Source: Trichoplax adhaerens (taxonomy: Eukaryota > Animalia > Placozoa). From it: DNA of 64,000 nt. Position 1 is the first letter of the stretch. Every line of letters starts with the position of its first letter. A program made the position numbers and the translations under genes. The notes under the pieces were generated by a model, which searched no databases, was not told where the DNA came from, and was given only the letters and a program-made list of their open reading frames with translations. Shown here one piece after another: positions 50,536-59,912 of the stretch. The stretch covers positions 84,197 through 148,196 of the forward strand of contig NW_002060970.1 in NCBI RefSeq assembly GCF_000150275.1, given 5' to 3'.

Positions 50536-52159
50536 ATGCAAAGATACCTCCAATTTGTGGATCGCTATTTTACTCCCTTGTATCAATTAAGTAAGTCATA
50601 ATCACGCTTCTATTCAGCTGTCTTGACGTGCACGAGTATCATGGAATGCTCATGAATGATATGAAAATAAAATGAAAAATCACTGCAAAGTGACATCTTT
50701 CGTACTGTATCATGCAATACTGTCATGGCTGACCTTGCAATGGATGCCTATTGCGATCATTGTCAACGTTCAATGTGTGTAGTCTTAGTAGTAAGTCAAT
50801 GCTGTAAGCTTGCCCAATAATTTGCAACGCAATAGGGTCATGTTGCACTTGAAATTCATTTCTTTCGTCGTCATTGTATACTATATGGTCAATTAGTGCA
50901 GGCCAAGATTCTTGACTTGCTTAGTTTATGATGGAGGAACTACGGTTAGATGGCATGATATATGAATAAATGGATTCCAATAGGATAACCCGATCAACTC
51001 CGCACACTATTCTGCTAATTTTATAGCATTTGTTAGACTTGCACCATATCTCTCAATGTCTTATTCATTGGATAGAAATGCCTTCTTTTTGGACTGCTTG
51101 TAGAACAGTACAGTATCACCAAAGGCAATACATTCCTATCCTTATTCATTATTGTTATTATATTATATTAATTACAATTATAGATGTAAAAGGCAAAGCC
51201 TTAGAAGATCACCTAATTTTACAGCATAGCAATAGGTATGTTCAGTATCCAAGATGGTTATAAATAGACCATGCACAACATACCAGGATATGTATAAATT
51301 CAGCACTGTATCTACAAATATTCCATGCTTGGATAGAAAGTAAGGCAATGCCTATTTTATTTCTATATTCTTCAAGAATATGTATCGTTGCTGTTGCTCC
51401 ATCGCATGCCATGTTTCAATGCCGCAGAAAGATTACCAATGTCGATTTTCAAGTGACATCAAAACTGAATCGTTTAGATAATAAAGTATCAGGAAAGAGA
51501 AAACGTTAGTCAGTTGTCAATTCCTCTTGACAATCCGTACCAATTGATTTGATTTCCATACATATCAATTTCTACGGTCTTTATAGCCTTATTCTCGAGC
51601 ATGGAATATGCCCGTATTGCAATACATTAATACCATCATGTGCTATCAAATTTGAATATTATCTTACAGGTGGAGCTCAAATGGTCAATGAAACTTCTCC
51701 TCTGTGTCACATTACTTGTGATGATGGAAGCAAGTATACTATTAGTAGGTAAAACACGTATTGCATAATGCTTGTAGAGCGATTACAGGACATTTTAAAT
51801 ACAAACAAGAATTCATCTTCGGATAACGATTTCTTTATTATCATTTTATAGTTGCGTCAAAGGCAAACTTATTGAAATTAATGAATTATTAATAGAAAAT
51901 CCAGATCTACTTGCAGAAAAGGTTCGATAACCAGCATTGATACTCATAGCCATTCATAATGGTGATTAAAATCAGGCTAAAATATTAACCTAATGTTGGC
52001 TTTTCTCTCTATCATTAGCCATGTACTGAAGGCTTCATCGCTGTAATCTTGCCTCGTAAAGTCAATCGCGACAAAAATGGTGATGACCCTATACTAGGTG
52101 ATGGCTTTCTTAGTAAAGAAAGTTATTGTAAAGCCATTGCTGATAGAGTGTCTGACTGA
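50536..52159 (+). CDS. ABITRAM: Actin-binding transcription modulator (Simiate / FAM206A)
   Basis: Six exons 50536-50590, 51184-51235, 51378-51504, 51670-51747, 51852-51921, 52019-52159. They encode FVDRYFT...[27 protein letters not shown]...NRLDNKVSGKRKRGAQ...CVKGKLIEINE...KPCTEGFIAVILP, all ABITRAM hallmark motifs. Confidence 0.95.
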
Positions 52160-52558
52160 AATATTTCAAATGTCAATTCGCCATTTTTAATTGCATACAC
52201 CTAAAGTCAAATGATTCGTATCGATTTCATTGACTTATTGTAAATACTGTACGTGTCGGATTTCGTTCCATAAAGATATTAGATGCTGTAAAAAAAACTG
52301 CGGTGAAACTGATTTTTTAGCGACGTTATAAACGTTTATTTAAAAAACGTAGCCTACATTGAAGCTAAATAGTAATGACAGTATCAGCTACTAATGCCTA
52401 AATTCTGATGAATCCATAAGCATTCAAGAAATAAATTGTGATATTACCCTTCAATGGAGGTTTTCCAATTGAGTTCGTTATTAATTATAATCATCATCAC
52501 GTTTCCACTATCCTCAACATAGTTAATGAAATATGCATGCACTTTAGACAGAAATAAA

Positions 52559-55176
52559 TTATTGTCCTGATGGAGATATTCTTTTACATAGCTCATCGAT
52601 TAAATCATCAATTCCATCGGAAACAACCAACCCTTGCATGGACACATCATCAATAAAGCCGGATGTAGCGGCATTTTCTGCCTACATCACATCAATAATT
52701 AATCCTCAATTACTTGACAGCAAAATCTGCTATATTAAATATCTGTGATGCTCAACTGCAATTATTATAATAGATGCCTTACCCATTTAAGAAAATGGTC
52801 ATAATATCCTTTCATATTAAATAAACCCACTGGCTTCGAATGTTTTCTAATACGAAAACTACAGCAATGGCATTGAACAAATTTAATGAAACACAAAACA
52901 GTGGCTAGTTTTATGACATTTGTGCACTGTAATTATAAGATATAATTTCAATCAAGTATCATTTATTAGCTACCCATGCTTGTTACTCATAAAATCATCT
53001 TACCCGGTCCAAATGTCAGTGACTTCATCAACGGTGCCAATGCCTCCAGGTAAGGCAATAAATGCGTCTGACTATTTTATGGAATTGCGATTTAGTATCC
53101 ACAAAGGTAAACGATGTTCATTAGCCCGGTACCATAATAATAATACAAGTGCATTATACATTCCAAGAATGTTATATTAGCAATTACACAAGAGTATTCC
53201 TAAAAACTATTTGATACCAGCAGCATTTACCTTTTCAAACATAATCTTTTTTCGTTCGTAAAAATTGGGGACAATAATGGTTTCGCCGACTGCATTACGA
53301 TGCCTCGAACCTACAGTAAAACGTTTGCATGCATCCAATGATGTGAATAAGAAACTCTCAAGCATAATGTTAACGGTACTTTTAGCAAGGGCGGTCGCTA
53401 ACAAGGGCTCTAGCATTCATGGTTGATATTCGGCAAGTTGCCCTCTATCGTTACAAAGCTTACAATAATGTAGAACGATTCCAAAATTGCAGCATACTTT
53501 CTACATTCATACGGAGTAGCTATTGCTTTCTAAACTGTAATGCTATTGCAATCGAAAGAACTAACCTTCAAAAAAATCGGGTATAACACCAGTAATATGA
53601 CCACCTCCTTCAGCAACGCCGTTGGCTACAGCTCCCATTAAGCCCAAATTGCCACCACCATATACTAAATCAATTTTCCTAGCAGCTAATCGTGCTCCTA
53701 ACTCTGTAAGAATGTTTGCATATTATTAATAACTCCTTATCACCCTGCTTTTATTAGTAGATGTGTTTATGCTAAAGAATCCCATATTTTTATAGTTTAC
53801 TTTTTCGTTCATAGCTGCATTAGGACAATCCTCCAGTTCTGTCAATATCTACATATAGTATTTTACTATTATAAGGAAATTAATTGATAGGTTTAACAAG
53901 TATTTATGATTTTTTTGGTTGGCATGGGAGCTGAAATAGTTGGATTATCACAACTATGCTAGAACAGCACCAATCATACAAAGATTAATTCTAAATCACT
54001 GCAACACACTAAGCATACAGAATAGGCATAGATCAGGGAAGTACTTACAATTATCAAAGCATTCTAATCTTACACTATTTATTTAGTCATATATCGATTA
54101 AATTTTCTATTTCTTAGCCTACTTGCAACTGTTACATTTCTGTATGCACGACCTTCTCTGTATACCTAATGTACTTTACTTAGAATGAAAGTAATTGAAT
54201 CTACGCGTATGATCAGTATGAAAGTAATTATATTCTAGGTCAATTTTTGATACTATTTTTCCAGAATCGTTCGTAAGTCTAGAAATAACACTGTTTTTAT
54301 ATTTACTTATATGTACGAACTACTGCAGAACTACTGTAGTTGACACAAGGAATGTGTAGTGTAGGAAAAATACGTTCTATGGTGCGACTCCCGATTATAT
54401 CATCGTAAGTAAGATGGCAGCGTTAGACTTGAGTAGACCAGTGGTATCAGAGATTCTATTTAGGCAGTAGGATAGATGAGTACTGCGAGTGGATCATTTT
54501 CGAGATGATCGCTATACCTTTACGTGAGAATACAGGGAGCTTCGGAAGTTGGCATCAGTCTGTATCAGTAACTCGTTATGATAAATCTGGAGTAAGATGA
54601 CAATCATAACTAACCTGAGGTCTCTCACTCTGAAAAGCAATACTCCATATTGAGCTGGATAAGGAAATTGGCAGATTAAAAGAAATTTGACTAGGGAGAA
54701 TCATTCAATTTGTTCAATATCTTTATCAATACGCTATCATGAAGGATAACATAAGGCTGACTCCTCTTGAAGGGAGCAGAGTCTGAAATCTAAGATGTCG
54801 CTGTGTGAATCTTATGTTTTATACGTTTAGGGCTACTGTAACTTTCAACCCTGATTTTAAGCAATAAACTGTTGTTATCTGCTACCGTTAGGAGCTGTTT
54901 ATTTGAGTTGCAGCTGCATAGCAAGGATAGAAATAGTACTTTACTACACAATGTTACTTTACATTCTGCCGCTGTAGCAAAGTCGACCTCAAAGCGCTTT
55001 ATTTGCCTGATCAACAGCTCCATCTTGCAGACTCATCCAGTACTCGTACATGTAACTCATTCACTGGCGGTAAACCCATTCACAACAGGCTCGCACATAT
55101 AAAACTAACCTTTGGCTAATCTCATATAAGATTCATCATTACCAGGCAAGCTACCACAATAAACGGCAAATTTCAT
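52559..55176 (-). CDS. LOG: LOG (LONELY GUY) family nucleoside 5'-monophosphate phosphoribohydrolase, type-I-like, 183 aa
   Basis: Six exons 55176-55110, 53703-53566, 53310-53231, 53071-53004, 52858-52783, 52681-52559 with consistent phases. Protein: MKFAVYCGSLPG...LVYGGGNLGLMGAVA......GG...GVIP...FYERKKIMFEKSDAFIALPGGIGTVDE...HSKPVGLFNMKGYYD, including the PGGxGTxxE signature and the catalytic R of ERK. Confidence 0.93.
54130..54843. mobile_element. Probable solo-LTR-like insertion in the first coding intron of LOG
   Basis: TGTTAC...GTAACT with flanks TGCAAC/TTCAAC; accounts for half of this unusually long intron. Single copy in the window. Confidence 0.6.
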
Positions 55177-55594
55177 GTTGGAATTGATATAACCAGCTGA
55201 CTCAATGTAGCGAAAATTCTTTTGCAGTCTTTTGCAGCAGCGATGCAGCGATGGCAACAGCAGAATGATCTAGTACGGTACTTACCGCCTCGTGTCTGTC
55301 TGTCTGGATATCTGTACAGTCTTCATTGACCAGTTTGACCACCTGCACATTCTATGACAAGATTTCATTTTGCTGGTCATTTCAACTGAAACGCATACCT
55401 GAAGCAATACGTTAGACTATCGGCAAATTGCCATCCAAATTAGATGCTTGGTGGATTTTGTTAATGATAGTTTTGATTTGGGTGCATTATTTTGCACTGA
55501 ACGGCCATTTCTCGTCGTCTCTTGTTCGACAGTAGTAGGCCCCGATGGTACGAGTATAGCATACTGCATTTATAATATATTGTAAATATACCAT

Positions 55595-56538
55595 TGTGAC
55601 AGTGTTATATAGAGTAGTCGAGTAGAAATATCTATGTTAGGATAATTTTGTTAGCCTACCCTTATTTACTTAACTTCTAATTTTGGATATATTGAGTTGG
55701 AATGTAGCACTGGCTTTTTAAGACAGTGACATATTGTGACGGTGTTATCTCACCATTTGAATAGATTTACGTAATCTTAGCTAATATGGTAGAACTGATG
55801 ATAACTTGATGTTGTTGTTTACTAATTACTGTCGATATATGACCATGTTATGTTAAATGGATTGTTTAACAGTAATAAAGATTATTATGACTTAATAGAA
55901 TAATCTCATATTATCTCTTAGTCGTAATCATGTGTAAAGAGGTATCCAAGTTGTTCTTGTCGTTGTTATGTTCGATTATCATCGAGCCTTATAAAAGCGA
56001 GTGCGCTGCGCAAAAGGCTCTAGTTGTTGTAGTTCTCCAGTTTGCAAGTCGTCTTTACGTAAAATAAAAGGGCGTTTAAGTCATAAGTTTGCTTAAGGAC
56101 TTATATCTTGCGTTTCCTTGCCACAAACAATTCCGGTTTGTGACACATATATGCAGTACATATACTGAAATTAAGAGTTACTAGTGCAAACTCCCGTCGC
56201 TTTACTGACGGTTTACGATAATGTGCTCATTTAACAGAGGTTCAGTAACTTTATACCGTACCGTGTAGACCTGTCAGAGGTTCAGTAACTTTATACCGTG
56301 TACTGTGTACTTTATCAACTATTGAAGAAGAGTATATAAATGCAGTATATCATGTGAAATAATTAATTCTGAAGCTTAGTGTTTATCGTAAAATACGAGG
56401 CGTCTAAGTCTTTGCGTAGTCTACCAGTAGGCCAAAAGTGTTCCTGATAATGCAGATATCCATTCCTCGATACGTGGTCAACAAATGGACTTATTGATCA
56501 TACATTACGTTATCTTATTGCAAAGTTGTTTTGCGACA
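55595..56538 (+). mobile_element. Solo-LTR-like element, family A variant, hosting a nested family B element
   Basis: TGTGAC...GCGACA, TSD ACCAT/ACCAT. The 5' and 3' thirds align with family A. Confidence 0.9.
55735..56145 (+). mobile_element. Nested solo-LTR-like element, family B
   Basis: TGTGAC...GTGACA, TSD CATAT/CATAT, near-identical to 34199-34622 apart from scattered substitutions and one indel of about 12 nt. Confidence 0.93.
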
Positions 56539-58805: not shown

Positions 58806-59912
58806 TTATAAACAACGAAAACGTTTTCGAACAGCCCTAAAATTGTCTTGAGATAGGAATATGATCGGAATAACAACACAATCTGCATGTAACATAATAA
58901 CCAAAATATACTCATAGAATAAATTTATTTTCAAGATACCGGATAAACTAAGTGCAATCAACGTCGATACACAAACATAGCAAATAAAAAATATTAAGCA
59001 GATAATAACTAATCGAATAATAATTTTGATATCAGCAGCATTGGTTTTGTTGACTAGTGGATTTGTTGACCGAGATAACTGATCGATAATTCGCCTTCGG
59101 GCTTTACGAACAATTTGAAATATTTTGGAATAATAGTGGCATACTAAACAAATTGGAACGGCAAAATAAAGTATAGTAAGTAAAATGTTATAAGTAAAAT
59201 GCCATGGTTGTACTCTTCTCATATCATCAAATAATGAGCAGCTACCAATAATGCCATTGTAGACAAATTTTCCCCAAACATCACCAATGGAGGGAGCCAA
59301 AGTTAAGATTGGTAGTACCCACGTAATAATGATAATGAAAGATACTTTACGAAAGAGTATAAACCACTTTGATCTAGGACGACGGGATACGCAGCAGTAT
59401 TGAATAATAGCTAAACTAGTTAGCGTTAAAACATTTGTCATATTGAATGCAATCGATGAGCCACCAAGTAACCGACAACTGAAGCTATTGCTGTGAAAAA
59501 TTTGAAAGGATGATGTCGTATAACGAAAGATGACTTTGATGGTCCTAGGAAATCAGTAAGATTAAAATTAATAATGCAATCAGAAAAGAACAATTGGAAA
59601 TTTTCTCATAGATGAAACAAATAAGAAATAAAGATCTTGACTTCCAGATAAGAATACATTTTGCCTGAAGATGAATACGACAGGAGATAGACTATCTACT
59701 TACTCTATGATCATAAATCCTAAATCAGAGATTGCCAAATTAAGGATAAGCCAATCGGTTGGAGTAATTTTGCTTTGTTGATTGGTTTTGCTTAAAATCA
59801 GTAATGCGTTACAGAACAGTGAAGCAATAAGAATAATCGACATTAAAACCAATGCGCCAGTGCTATTAGAAATTAAAAGTGGATAGGTGATATTCGATAA
59901 ATTGTGGGCCAT
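58806..59912 (-). CDS. Divergent rhodopsin-class (class A) GPCR, two exons, about 315 aa; loosely moody/Tre1/melatonin-receptor-like
   Basis: Exon 59912-59704 (N-glyc sites, TM1 with N, TM2 ILNLAISDL) splices in phase 2 to 59544-58806 (TM3 C...LAIIQY, TM4 W, ECL2 WGKFVYNGIIGSC, TM5 FAVP....YY..IF, TM6-7, helix 8 NFR). Confidence 0.88.

What the first reader, a model, noticed from the sequence alone, without database searches (positions are those of the whole stretch)
52559..55176. Intron-containing LONELY GUY (cytokinin-activating-type) enzyme embedded among animal genes
Seen: a complete 183-aa LOG with five spliceosomal introns, lying tail-to-tail with ABITRAM and near adhesion GPCRs and FGD, so it is not a bacterial contaminant. 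Known: type-I LOGs release free bases (cytokinins, adenine) from nucleoside monophosphates in plants, fungi and bacteria, and are not a recognised part of the well-studied bilaterian gene sets. Inference: either a domesticated horizontal acquisition or an ancestral gene lost in most animals. It would give this animal a one-step route from modified (e.g. tRNA-derived isopentenyl) AMP to cytokinin-like bases, possibly relevant to algal food or symbionts.
Basis: partly seen in the sequence, partly recalled or inferred. Interest (0 to 1): 0.85.

Follow-up and report, generated by a model that had tools for sequence, protein, structure and literature searches.

The report
Trichoplax LOG-family nucleotide hydrolase gene
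A real, expressed, five-intron gene of the placozoan Trichoplax encodes a LONELY GUY (LOG)-family nucleotide-cleaving enzyme. It is already catalogued in public databases but unstudied, its origin (inherited or transferred) stays unresolved, and the pocket that recognises the base differs from that of the plant cytokinin-activating enzymes.

Summary
A six-exon, five-intron (all GT-AG) gene lies on the minus strand at 52559-55176 and encodes 183 aa. Spliced contigs carry all five joints in two runs whose RNA label is a guess, and three joints in one run on record as RNA. The protein scores 175 bits on TIGR00730 (cut-off 96). It is letter-for-letter the public record TRIADDRAFT_61856 / XP_002117840.1 / UniProt B3SC66, and RDD37694.1 of Trichoplax sp. 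H2, already auto-named a cytokinin phosphoribohydrolase. The gene is therefore catalogued, though I found no paper that discusses it. It is single-copy in this genome and not a contaminant.

Its nearest relatives, bacteria and plants alike, are only 41-50% identical. ML trees put it on a long unsupported branch outside a supported eukaryote LOG clade, but an AU test does not reject eukaryote monophyly. HGT versus ancestral retention stays open. One coral paper names a host LOG3-like gene.

New here: the catalytic Arg and Glu and the nucleotide-binding motifs are intact, but four of the five residues of the putative N6-prenyl pocket differ (F-Y-K-D-G against M-H-K-E-W in 247 of 275 homologues). 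The genome has one IPPT-family (isopentenyltransferase) locus and no CHASE or CKX match. I read it as a dimeric nucleotide N-glycosidase of altered specificity, not a proven cytokinin activator.

The parts
55110..55176 (-). Exon 1 (ATG at 55176; codons 1-22 plus 1 nt)
   Evidence: GT donor at 55109-55108; joint 53703/55110 in spliced contigs of X9 and X16
53566..53703 (-). Exon 2; holds the nucleotide-binding loop GGGNLGLMG (53633-53659)
   Evidence: best exon match to TIGR00730 (33 bits) and to Arabidopsis LOG8/LOG3 structures
53231..53310 (-). Exon 3; holds FYERK (53249-53263) with the catalytic Arg88 (53252-53254)
   Evidence: joints on both sides in spliced contigs
53004..53071 (-). Exon 4; holds PGGIGTVDE (53024-53050, catalytic Glu111 at 53024-53026) and the variant pocket residues D114, W116 and part of G118 (53004-53017)
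52783..52858 (-). Exon 5 (acceptor fixed by RNA at 52858/52859)
   Evidence: Joint 52858/53004 in X14, X9 and X16
52559..52681 (-). Exon 6 with TAA stop (52559-52561)
   Evidence: joint 52681/52783 in three runs
55177..55248 (-). 5' untranslated stretch covered by transcript contigs; no upstream ATG in it
   Evidence: Contigs reach 55190, 55233 and 55248; sequence read
52200..52558 (-). 3' untranslated stretch, or overlap with the convergent neighbour's 3' end; the spliced contigs run through it and beyond 52200
   Evidence: records 12 and 14; AATAAA/ATTAAA hexamers 219 and 368 nt after the stop
53704..55109 (-). Intron 1 (1406 nt); its 5' part (54727-55139) is also covered by unspliced contigs
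   Evidence: records 10 and 17; weak dispersed-repeat similarity

Best explanation
This is the single-copy Trichoplax gene TRIADDRAFT_61856. It is a host gene with five spliceosomal introns and it is transcribed and correctly spliced. It encodes a short (183 aa) type-I-like LOG-family protein with a Rossmann-like fold, modelled as a homodimer whose interface carries the PGGxGTxxE motif. Shown: the gene model, splicing, family membership, retention of the catalytic Arg88 and Glu111 and of the nucleotide-binding motifs, and replacement of four of the five putative N6-substituent pocket residues. Inferred: it is an active nucleoside-5'-monophosphate N-glycosidase (phosphoribohydrolase) that releases a free base and ribose 5-phosphate from AMP-type nucleotides. 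Also inferred: because the pocket is remodelled and the genome shows no cytokinin receptor or oxidase, its main job is more likely turnover or salvage of plain or modified purine nucleotides (from its own tRNA/RNA or from digested prey) than hormone-like cytokinin signalling. Whether it descends from the ancestral eukaryotic LOG or from an old bacterial transfer is not resolved.
For: Gene model and splicing. Identity with the public protein P0001 (XP_002117840.1, EDV19683.1, RDD37694.1, B3SC66). Family: TIGR00730 175.1 bits and PF03641 120.5 bits. Best solved relatives are Arabidopsis LOG3 (137.9 bits), LOG8 and B. subtilis YvdD. The Atlas model has pTM 0.90 and TM 0.95 to a LOG cluster. Single locus in the genome. 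Conservation: 34 of the 40 columns that are at least 93% conserved in 274 homologues are kept, and Arg88, Lys89 and Glu111 match invariant columns. Pocket: F85, Y86, D114 and G118 replace M, H, E and W; the combination F-Y-K-D-G is unique among 275 sequences, against M-H-K-E-W in 247. Residue roles come from PMC4979012. Homodimer model: ipSAE 0.82 against a best control of 0.00; that mark was reached by 21 of 30 proteins solved as pairs of one chain and by 0 of 23 solved as single chains (eukaryotes: 17 of 29, and 0 of 30). The runs agree in at least 98% of contacts, partner pLDDT is at least 88, and the interface includes 86, 103-110, 113-114 and 116-117. Pathway context: one IPPT locus, no CHASE, no Cytokin-bind. 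The one letter difference reported inside the coding sequence in a second strain's RNA is synonymous.
Against: No enzyme assay exists for this protein. Pocket roles are taken from a bacterial structure with modelled substrate, not from a complex with a cytokinin nucleotide (PMC4979012). Characterised LOGs with non-canonical pockets (mycobacterial type Ib, type II) still act on cytokinin nucleotides in vitro according to PMC5379747, so a changed pocket does not exclude that activity. The dimer pass may be memory of solved LOG dimers. Absence of CHASE and CKX rests on a six-frame exon-wise search of a draft assembly. Contigs cannot give expression level or cell type.
Confidence: 0.7

Rival explanations
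1. Canonical cytokinin-activating LOG: the enzyme converts tRNA-derived isopentenyl-AMP and similar nucleotides to free cytokinin bases, which the animal uses as signals towards algae, bacteria or its symbionts.
For: It is a LOG family member with intact catalytic residues. Its best solved relative is Arabidopsis LOG3. One IPPT-family locus could supply i6A-type substrates. LOGs with variant pockets still cleave cytokinin nucleotides (PMC5379747).
Against: Four of the five putative prenyl-pocket residues are replaced, a combination unique among 275 homologues. No CHASE receptor and no cytokinin oxidase were found. LOGs also cleave plain AMP (PMC4979012, PMC11228631). No cytokinin measurements exist for placozoans in the searched literature.
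Confidence: 0.2
2. Origin A: vertical inheritance. The gene descends from the ancestral eukaryotic LOG, was kept in placozoans (and perhaps cnidarians), was lost in bilaterians, and diverged fast after its pocket changed.
For: LOGs of plants, Amoebozoa (Balamuthia, Polysphondylium, Filamoeba) and Pharyngomonas form a starred clade, so the family is old in eukaryotes. The AU test does not reject Trichoplax joining that clade: p 0.856 with the small set, where the constrained tree was even 18.7 lnL better, and p 0.266 with the wider set. There are five introns. Exon-like ORFs from unknown contigs (P0003 on a short contig; P0011 and P0014 on contigs of 255 kb and 92 kb) end or begin at or next to the Trichoplax exon-2 borders. 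A coral host gene is named LOG3 (PMC13581030).
Against: Free ML trees place it outside the eukaryote clade among bacterial sequences. Mean identity is slightly higher to the hits of the Trichoplax search, which are mostly bacteria and metagenomes (43.2%), than to the hits of the Pharyngomonas search, which are mostly plants (41.4%). No named animal or holozoan protein stands among the 120 best hits. The organisms behind the exon-like fragments are unknown.
Confidence: 0.5
3. Origin B: old horizontal transfer from a bacterium into the placozoan lineage, followed by intron gain and compositional adaptation.
For: In the free trees it sits among bacteria, weakly next to a Microbacteriaceae sequence (94/73, unstarred). 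D110 (31 of 117) and W116 (37 of 117) are common among the hits of the Trichoplax search, mostly bacteria and metagenomes, but rare or absent (2 and 0 of 117) among the hits of the Pharyngomonas search, mostly plants. The C-terminal half shares D-E-x-x-D-x-W-T and an M-x-x-L-V-V-x-D stretch with mycobacterial type-Ib LOGs. An Actinacidiphila plasmid LOG has the same W-S/T-G pattern in place of the pocket Trp.
Against: No donor is closer than 50% identity in 5.8 billion clusters, metagenome contigs or 185,579 species genomes. No starred branch holds it with any bacterium. The gene was not listed among the bacterial-like genes studied by Driscoll et al. 2013, whose screen was built around Rickettsiales (PMC3641634). 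The long branch (1.45-1.65) invites misplacement. Adding five actinobacterial plasmid LOGs gave only a polytomy.
Confidence: 0.4
4. Bacterial contamination or assembly artefact, or an inactive relic.
For: The family is overwhelmingly bacterial, and Trichoplax harbours endosymbionts (PMC3641634).
Against: Five GT-AG introns are removed in transcript contigs from three studies. The contig is long and AT-rich with GPCR genes. The same protein stands in two independent Trichoplax assemblies. The reading frame is intact, 34 of 40 conserved columns are kept, and the catalytic residues are intact.
Confidence: 0.05

Closest known systems
Type-Ia LOGs (Arabidopsis LOG3/LOG8, PDB 2A33/1YDH; C. glutamicum CgLOG 5ITS; Claviceps LOG 5AJT)
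   Same: Same length class with no N-terminal extension. GGGxxGLMG loop, xxERK with the catalytic Arg, and PGGxGTxxE with the catalytic Glu are all present. These are the best sequence matches among solved structures (137.9 and 127.1 bits). A homodimer is modelled.
   Different: The putative prenyl pocket M-H-K-E-W, identical in AtLOG3, OsLOG, CpLOG and CgLOG (PMC4979012), reads F-Y-K-D-G here. Overall identity is only about 40%. The host is an animal.
Type-Ib LOGs of Actinomycetales (PDB 7W2I, 3QUA, 3SBX)
   Same: Asp at the positions of CgLOG Glu121 and Glu125. W-T two and one residues before the usual pocket Trp, and no Trp at that position. An aromatic residue in place of the pocket His. 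A similar C-terminal M-x-x-L-V-V-x-D stretch.
   Different: The nucleotide loop is Ia-like (GLMG, not SAMG). Tyr stands where Ib has Trp, and Gly stands at the pocket-Trp position, where the Ib structures aligned here have Asp or Ala and PMC4979012 gives Glu128 for MmLOG. Scores are lower than to the plant LOGs (121.6, 121.5 and 118.3 bits). I could not place Ib sequences in a tree because I had no usable reference for them.
Dictyostelium LOG (DdLOG, PMC11228631), yeast LOG1/YJL055W, and E. coli PpnN (the last two from my own knowledge)
   Same: Non-plant LOG-family enzymes that cleave ordinary nucleotides as well as, or instead of, cytokinin nucleotides. This is the functional model I favour here.
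   Different: Not compared residue by residue here. PpnN is a much larger multi-domain enzyme. A Polysphondylium homologue sits in the eukaryote clade that Trichoplax does not clearly join.
[quoted passage not shown]
   Same: A LOG-named gene in a non-bilaterian animal's gene set, reported as expressed in oral epidermis.
   Different: Known to me only as a name in a paper.

Membership tests
LOG / TIGR00730 / PF03641 family | Full-length match to the family profile above the curated cut-off | tested here: met
   TIGR00730 175.1 bits (cut-off 96.35), positions 3-175 of 178. PF03641 120.5 bits (cut-off 27). The exons map collinearly.
LOG / TIGR00730 / PF03641 family | PGGxGTxxE motif and glycine-rich nucleotide loop | tested here: met
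   PGGIGTVDE at residues 103-111 and GGGNLGLMG at residues 38-46.
LOG / TIGR00730 / PF03641 family | Catalytic Arg and Glu (CgLOG Arg99, Glu122) | tested here: met
   Arg88 and Glu111 align to columns that are invariant in the 234 hits counted (117 of each search). Roles are from PMC4979012.
LOG / TIGR00730 / PF03641 family | Rossmann-like alpha/beta fold of solved LOGs | tested here: met
   The Atlas's own model has pTM 0.90 and TM 0.95 over 179 residues to a LOG cluster. I made no model of my own.
LOG / TIGR00730 / PF03641 family | Phosphoribohydrolase activity on nucleoside 5'-monophosphates | not testable with these tools
   Needs a recombinant enzyme assay.
Type I (dimeric) as against type II (hexameric) LOG | No N-terminal alpha-1 extension; homodimer | tested here: met
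   The conserved core starts at residue 3 of 183. Type II structures score only 51 and 42.6 bits. Dimer model: 0.82 against a best control of 0.00; the mark was reached by 21 of 30 proteins solved as pairs and 0 of 23 solved as single chains; contacts agree at least 98%; pLDDT at least 88; the pass may be from memory.
Type Ia, the cytokinin-activating subgroup | Prenyl-pocket residues Met, His, Lys, Glu', Trp' (CgLOG 96, 97, 100, 125, 129) | tested here: not met
   Phe85, Tyr86, Lys89, Asp114, Gly118: only Lys is kept. 247 of 275 homologues have M-H-K-E-W.
Type Ib (Actinomycetales) subgroup | Trp for the pocket His, Asp for Glu125, Glu for Trp129, Asp for Glu121 (MmLOG, PMC4979012) | tested here: inconclusive
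   Both Asp are shared, and W-T precedes the position as in 7W2I and 3QUA. But Tyr replaces Trp, Gly stands where PMC4979012 gives Glu for MmLOG, and the G-loop is Ia-like. No tree with Ib sequences was possible.
Cytokinin pathway in the plant or Dictyostelium sense | Companion genes: isopentenyltransferase, CHASE-domain receptor, cytokinin oxidase | tested here: not met
   One IPPT (PF01715) locus on C1408. No CHASE (PF03924) and no Cytokin-bind (PF09265) match in the own genome. The genome is a draft, searched exon by exon.
Metazoan orthologue group | Orthologues in other animals that form a clade | tested here: inconclusive
   No named animal stands in the best 120 of 5.8 billion clusters, and nothing exceeds 50% identity. 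No protein shares the variant pocket region. One coral gene is known by name only.

The most novel reading that the evidence does not exclude
The placozoan LOG is a neofunctionalised enzyme. Its uniquely remodelled base and N6 pocket (F-Y-K-D-G) gives it a substrate no characterised LOG prefers, for example a bulky or polar modified AMP from tRNA turnover, prey or the endosymbionts. It would be either a lone animal survivor of the ancestral eukaryotic LOG or an old bacterial acquisition that gained five introns.
Probability: 0.25. Interest if true: 0.6.

Novelty: new member of a known kind. Interest (0 to 1): 0.35.

Why it matters
LOG enzymes are studied as the last step of cytokinin synthesis in plants, fungi, bacteria, archaea and Dictyostelium. 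The reviews I read do not list animals.

An expressed, intron-bearing LOG in one of the earliest-branching animals bears on two questions. One is how free N6-modified adenines, which have been reported in animal tissues, can arise. The other is whether early animals kept or re-acquired a nucleotide N-glycosidase that bilaterians lack.

The practical value is modest. The gene is already catalogued. What is added here is RNA proof of the gene model, the failure of current data to decide its origin, and a concrete, testable oddity: four pocket substitutions beside an intact catalytic core. That oddity argues against copying the 'cytokinin-activating' label onto it.

Tried and rejected
- **First hand model (179 aa).** Its exon-5 acceptor was wrong and was corrected from the spliced contigs.
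- **P0151.** This was the best non-self hit at 206 bits. It is a tandem, partly duplicated, bacterial-like LOG, not a placozoan relative.
- **The look-up of encoding contigs.** I therefore could not fetch the DNA or sample of the exon-like fragments P0003, P0011 and P0014, nor plant or amoebozoan genes for an intron-position comparison.
- **Metagenome and species-genome scans with the protein.** They found only uninterrupted bacterial genes at 39-47% identity.
- **Region-limited search for the variant pocket (residues 76-125).** It found no protein sharing it. P0389 has M-Y-K-E-H.
- **Search seeded with the Pharyngomonas LOG.** It returned mostly plants. It gave a few Amoebozoa for the tree but no animal.
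- **Plasmid tblastn, used to obtain actinobacterial LOGs.** It gave five usable sequences. None grouped with Trichoplax. The careful tree of that set was killed by the sandbox, so only a quick tree exists.
- **Mycobacterial type-Ib sequences.** They could not be put in a tree because I held no reference for them.
- **Literature.** No paper holds the gene's accession numbers. None links Trichoplax and cytokinin in substance. The 2013 list of bacterial-like Trichoplax genes does not name it.
- **The neighbour 'ABITRAM'.** Pfam and the Atlas gave nothing.
- **Rfam on 52000-56000.** Nothing.
- **NCBIfam equivalog NF058542.** It is too narrow to discriminate: Arabidopsis LOG also scores only 132 bits against a cut-off of 300.
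Full report
**What is there**

On the minus strand between 55176 (ATG) and 52559 (end of the TAA stop) lie six exons:
- 55176-55110
- 53703-53566
- 53310-53231
- 53071-53004
- 52858-52783
- 52681-52559

They are separated by five GT-AG introns of 1406, 255, 159, 145 and 101 nt. My first model chose a wrong acceptor for exon 5 and gave 179 aa.

Laying public runs on window:52200-55600 corrected this:
- Contigs of runs X9 and X16 carry all five joints. Their RNA label is only a guess.
- A contig of X14, a run on record as RNA-Seq from a second organism label, carries three of the joints.
- Transcript contigs reach at least 55248 upstream and run past 52200 downstream.

Contigs cannot give strand, ends or expression level.

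**How the searches were done**

The spliced model was searched exon by exon, by reference. The joined sequence was built only inside the sandbox, to translate it and compare it.

The exon-2 search of 1.84 billion representatives returned a 183-aa protein, P0001, that is 100% identical over that exon. The sandbox comparison shows P0001 equals the joined model letter for letter. All later full-length searches used P0001, the database's own record.

**Identity**

P0001 carries these public names:
- EDV19683.1 / XP_002117840.1, 'hypothetical protein TRIADDRAFT_61856' of Trichoplax adhaerens
- RDD37694.1, 'putative cytokinin riboside 5'-monophosphate phosphoribohydrolase LOGL9' of Trichoplax sp. 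H2
- UniRef100_B3SC66

The own genome has 105,631,681 bases in 1414 contigs and the window has 31.5% GC. This fits the public T. adhaerens assembly; that is my inference.

Family scores and structure:
- The protein scores 175.1 bits on TIGR00730 (cut-off 96.35) and 120.5 bits on PF03641.
- Its best solved relatives are Arabidopsis LOG3 and LOG8 and B. subtilis YvdD. Type II LOGs score far lower.
- The Atlas's model of this very sequence has pTM 0.90 and matches a LOG cluster at TM 0.95.
- A two-copy model scores 0.82 against a best control of 0.00. That mark was reached by 21 of 30 proteins solved as pairs of one chain and by 0 of 23 solved as single chains. The runs agree in at least 98% of contacts and the partner's pLDDT is at least 88.
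- The modelled interface runs through the PGG motif and residues 86, 113-114 and 116-117. Because LOG dimers are solved, the pass may be memory rather than evidence.

The genome holds only this one LOG locus.

**Not a contaminant, not new as a record**

Three things exclude bacterial contamination:
- splicing of five introns;
- the long AT-rich contig with class-A GPCR ORFs upstream at 58806-59912;
- presence of the identical protein in two Trichoplax assemblies.

Earlier notes of this scan place adhesion GPCRs just beyond the window; I did not test them. The neighbour called ABITRAM could not be verified with the tools.

The gene is thus catalogued and auto-named. Literature checks:
- No paper in the library holds its accession numbers.
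- None links Trichoplax and cytokinins in substance.
- The cytokinin/LOG papers I read list or sample plants, bacteria, fungi, archaea and Dictyostelium, not animals.
- The 2013 survey of bacterial-like Trichoplax genes does not name it.

**Relatives and origin**

Among 5.8 billion clusters nothing but the protein itself exceeds 50% identity. The best 120 hits are bacteria, metagenome proteins, a few plants and the protist Pharyngomonas, with no named animal. Scans of JGI metagenomes and of one genome for each of 185,579 prokaryotic species found only uninterrupted bacterial genes at 39-47% identity.

A search seeded with the Pharyngomonas protein added Amoebozoa (Balamuthia, Polysphondylium, Filamoeba) and many plants.

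The trees and tests gave the following:
- In ML trees (LG+C20 PMSF), plants, Amoebozoa and Pharyngomonas form a starred clade.
- Trichoplax sits outside it on a long branch (1.45-1.65). No starred set holds it. It lies weakly beside a Microbacteriaceae sequence or another long branch.
- With the small eukaryote sample, forcing Trichoplax into the eukaryote clade gave a tree 18.7 lnL better than the free search had found (p-AU 0.856).
- With the wider sample, the forced tree was 11.8 lnL worse, but it was not rejected (p-AU 0.266).

The data therefore do not decide between descent from the eukaryotic LOG and an old bacterial transfer.

Hints for descent:
- the five introns;
- three exon-like ORFs from unknown contigs (P0003, P0011, P0014) that start or stop at or beside the exon-2 borders and are 61-71% identical to that exon;
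- a coral paper that names a host 'LOG3' gene up-regulated in oral epidermis (PMC13581030).

Hints for transfer:
- the free-tree position;
- character states (Asp110, Trp116) that are common among the hits of the Trichoplax search, mostly bacteria and metagenomes, but rare or absent among the hits of the Pharyngomonas search, mostly plants;
- a C-terminal half that resembles mycobacterial type-Ib LOGs;
- an Actinacidiphila plasmid LOG with the same W-S/T-G pattern.

I put descent at about 0.5 and transfer at about 0.4.

**The active site**

I aligned 275 homologues of 160-260 aa. Trichoplax keeps 34 of the 40 columns that are at least 93% conserved. These include Ser9, the glycine loop, Arg88, Lys89, the PGG motif and Glu111.

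Of the six departures, two are conservative (V59I, L67F). The other four are exactly the residues that Seo et al. assign to the putative N6-prenyl pocket of CgLOG, where they are identical in AtLOG3, rice LOG and Claviceps LOG (PMC4979012):
- Met96 becomes Phe85
- His97 becomes Tyr86
- Glu125' becomes Asp114
- Trp129' becomes Gly118

Only Lys is kept. The combination F-Y-K-D-G is unique in the set, while 247 sequences have M-H-K-E-W. A search restricted to residues 76-125 found no other protein with this pocket.

The changes are thus concentrated at the substrate-selecting site beside an intact catalytic machinery. This pattern looks like a shift of specificity rather than decay. The one letter difference reported inside the coding sequence in the second strain's RNA is synonymous. 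That is too little for a selection test.

**Function**

Shown: family membership, motifs, fold-level likeness, a modelled dimer, and transcription.

Inferred from the family's established chemistry: hydrolysis of the N-glycosidic bond of AMP-type nucleotides to a free base plus ribose 5-phosphate.

The genome has one IPPT-family locus, which could supply i6A-modified tRNA. It has no CHASE-domain receptor and no cytokinin-oxidase domain. With the altered pocket, I favour a role in turnover or salvage of plain or modified purine nucleotides (about 0.55 within the 0.7 given to the whole explanation). I give about 0.2 to a dedicated cytokinin-activating role. The caveat is that LOGs with variant pockets still cleave cytokinin nucleotides in vitro (PMC5379747).

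**Verdict**

The feature is a catalogued but unstudied, divergent member of a known enzyme family in an unusual host. Interest is moderate to low unless the distribution survey or the enzyme assay turns up something unexpected.

Noticed in passing
window 54727-55139 (5' part of intron 1 and the exon-1 border): Unspliced contigs cross the exon-1 donor and cover about 380 nt of intron 1 in X14 (word depth 34.9, against 6.7 for the spliced contig) and in X9 (4.5, against 42.8). This could be intron retention, an alternative short transcript or a separate RNA. Part of the stretch (query positions 63-225) is 69-74% like three other places in the genome.
   Followed up: partly
window 52200-52558 and beyond 52200: The spliced LOG contigs continue 183 nt (X16) and 330 nt (X9) past 52200 into the convergent neighbour. 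Either the 3' UTR is long or the two genes' 3' ends overlap and the assembler merged them.
   Followed up: no
window 55367-55516: Contigs of three runs match only 55367-55388 and 55485-55516, with 146 other letters in between and long loose ends. This may be a related sequence elsewhere or a structural difference upstream of the gene. It is unexplained.
   Followed up: no
window 58806-59912 (-): Two ORFs match the rhodopsin-type GPCR family: 7tm_1 at 43 bits for 58806-59441 and 18.9 bits for 59700-59912. They look like two exons of one class-A receptor gene upstream of the LOG gene.
   Followed up: partly
proteins P0003, P0011, P0014: Short ORFs from Logan/ENA contigs (4.5, 255 and 92 kb) look like single LOG exons flanked by intron-like sequence. 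Their borders lie at or within a codon of the Trichoplax exon-2 borders. The organisms are unknown, and they could be other placozoans or other eukaryotes.
   Followed up: partly
L171:46-735 (Actinacidiphila glaucinigra plasmid NZ_CP109145.1): This plasmid-borne LOG has V-W-S-G where most LOGs have the pocket Trp. It is the only other sequence seen with Gly at that position. It is about 40% identical to the Trichoplax protein and does not group with it in the quick tree.
   Followed up: partly
G000:C1408:1285103-1286086 (L004, L005): The only IPPT (PF01715) locus of the genome, split over at least three exon-like pieces. I presume it is the tRNA isopentenyltransferase, but I did not model the gene.
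   Followed up: no
proteins P0002, P0005, P0151: These database proteins consist of tandem or partly duplicated LOG domains (426, 286 and 293 aa). They score high through two matched stretches and can mislead a best-hit reading.
   Followed up: partly
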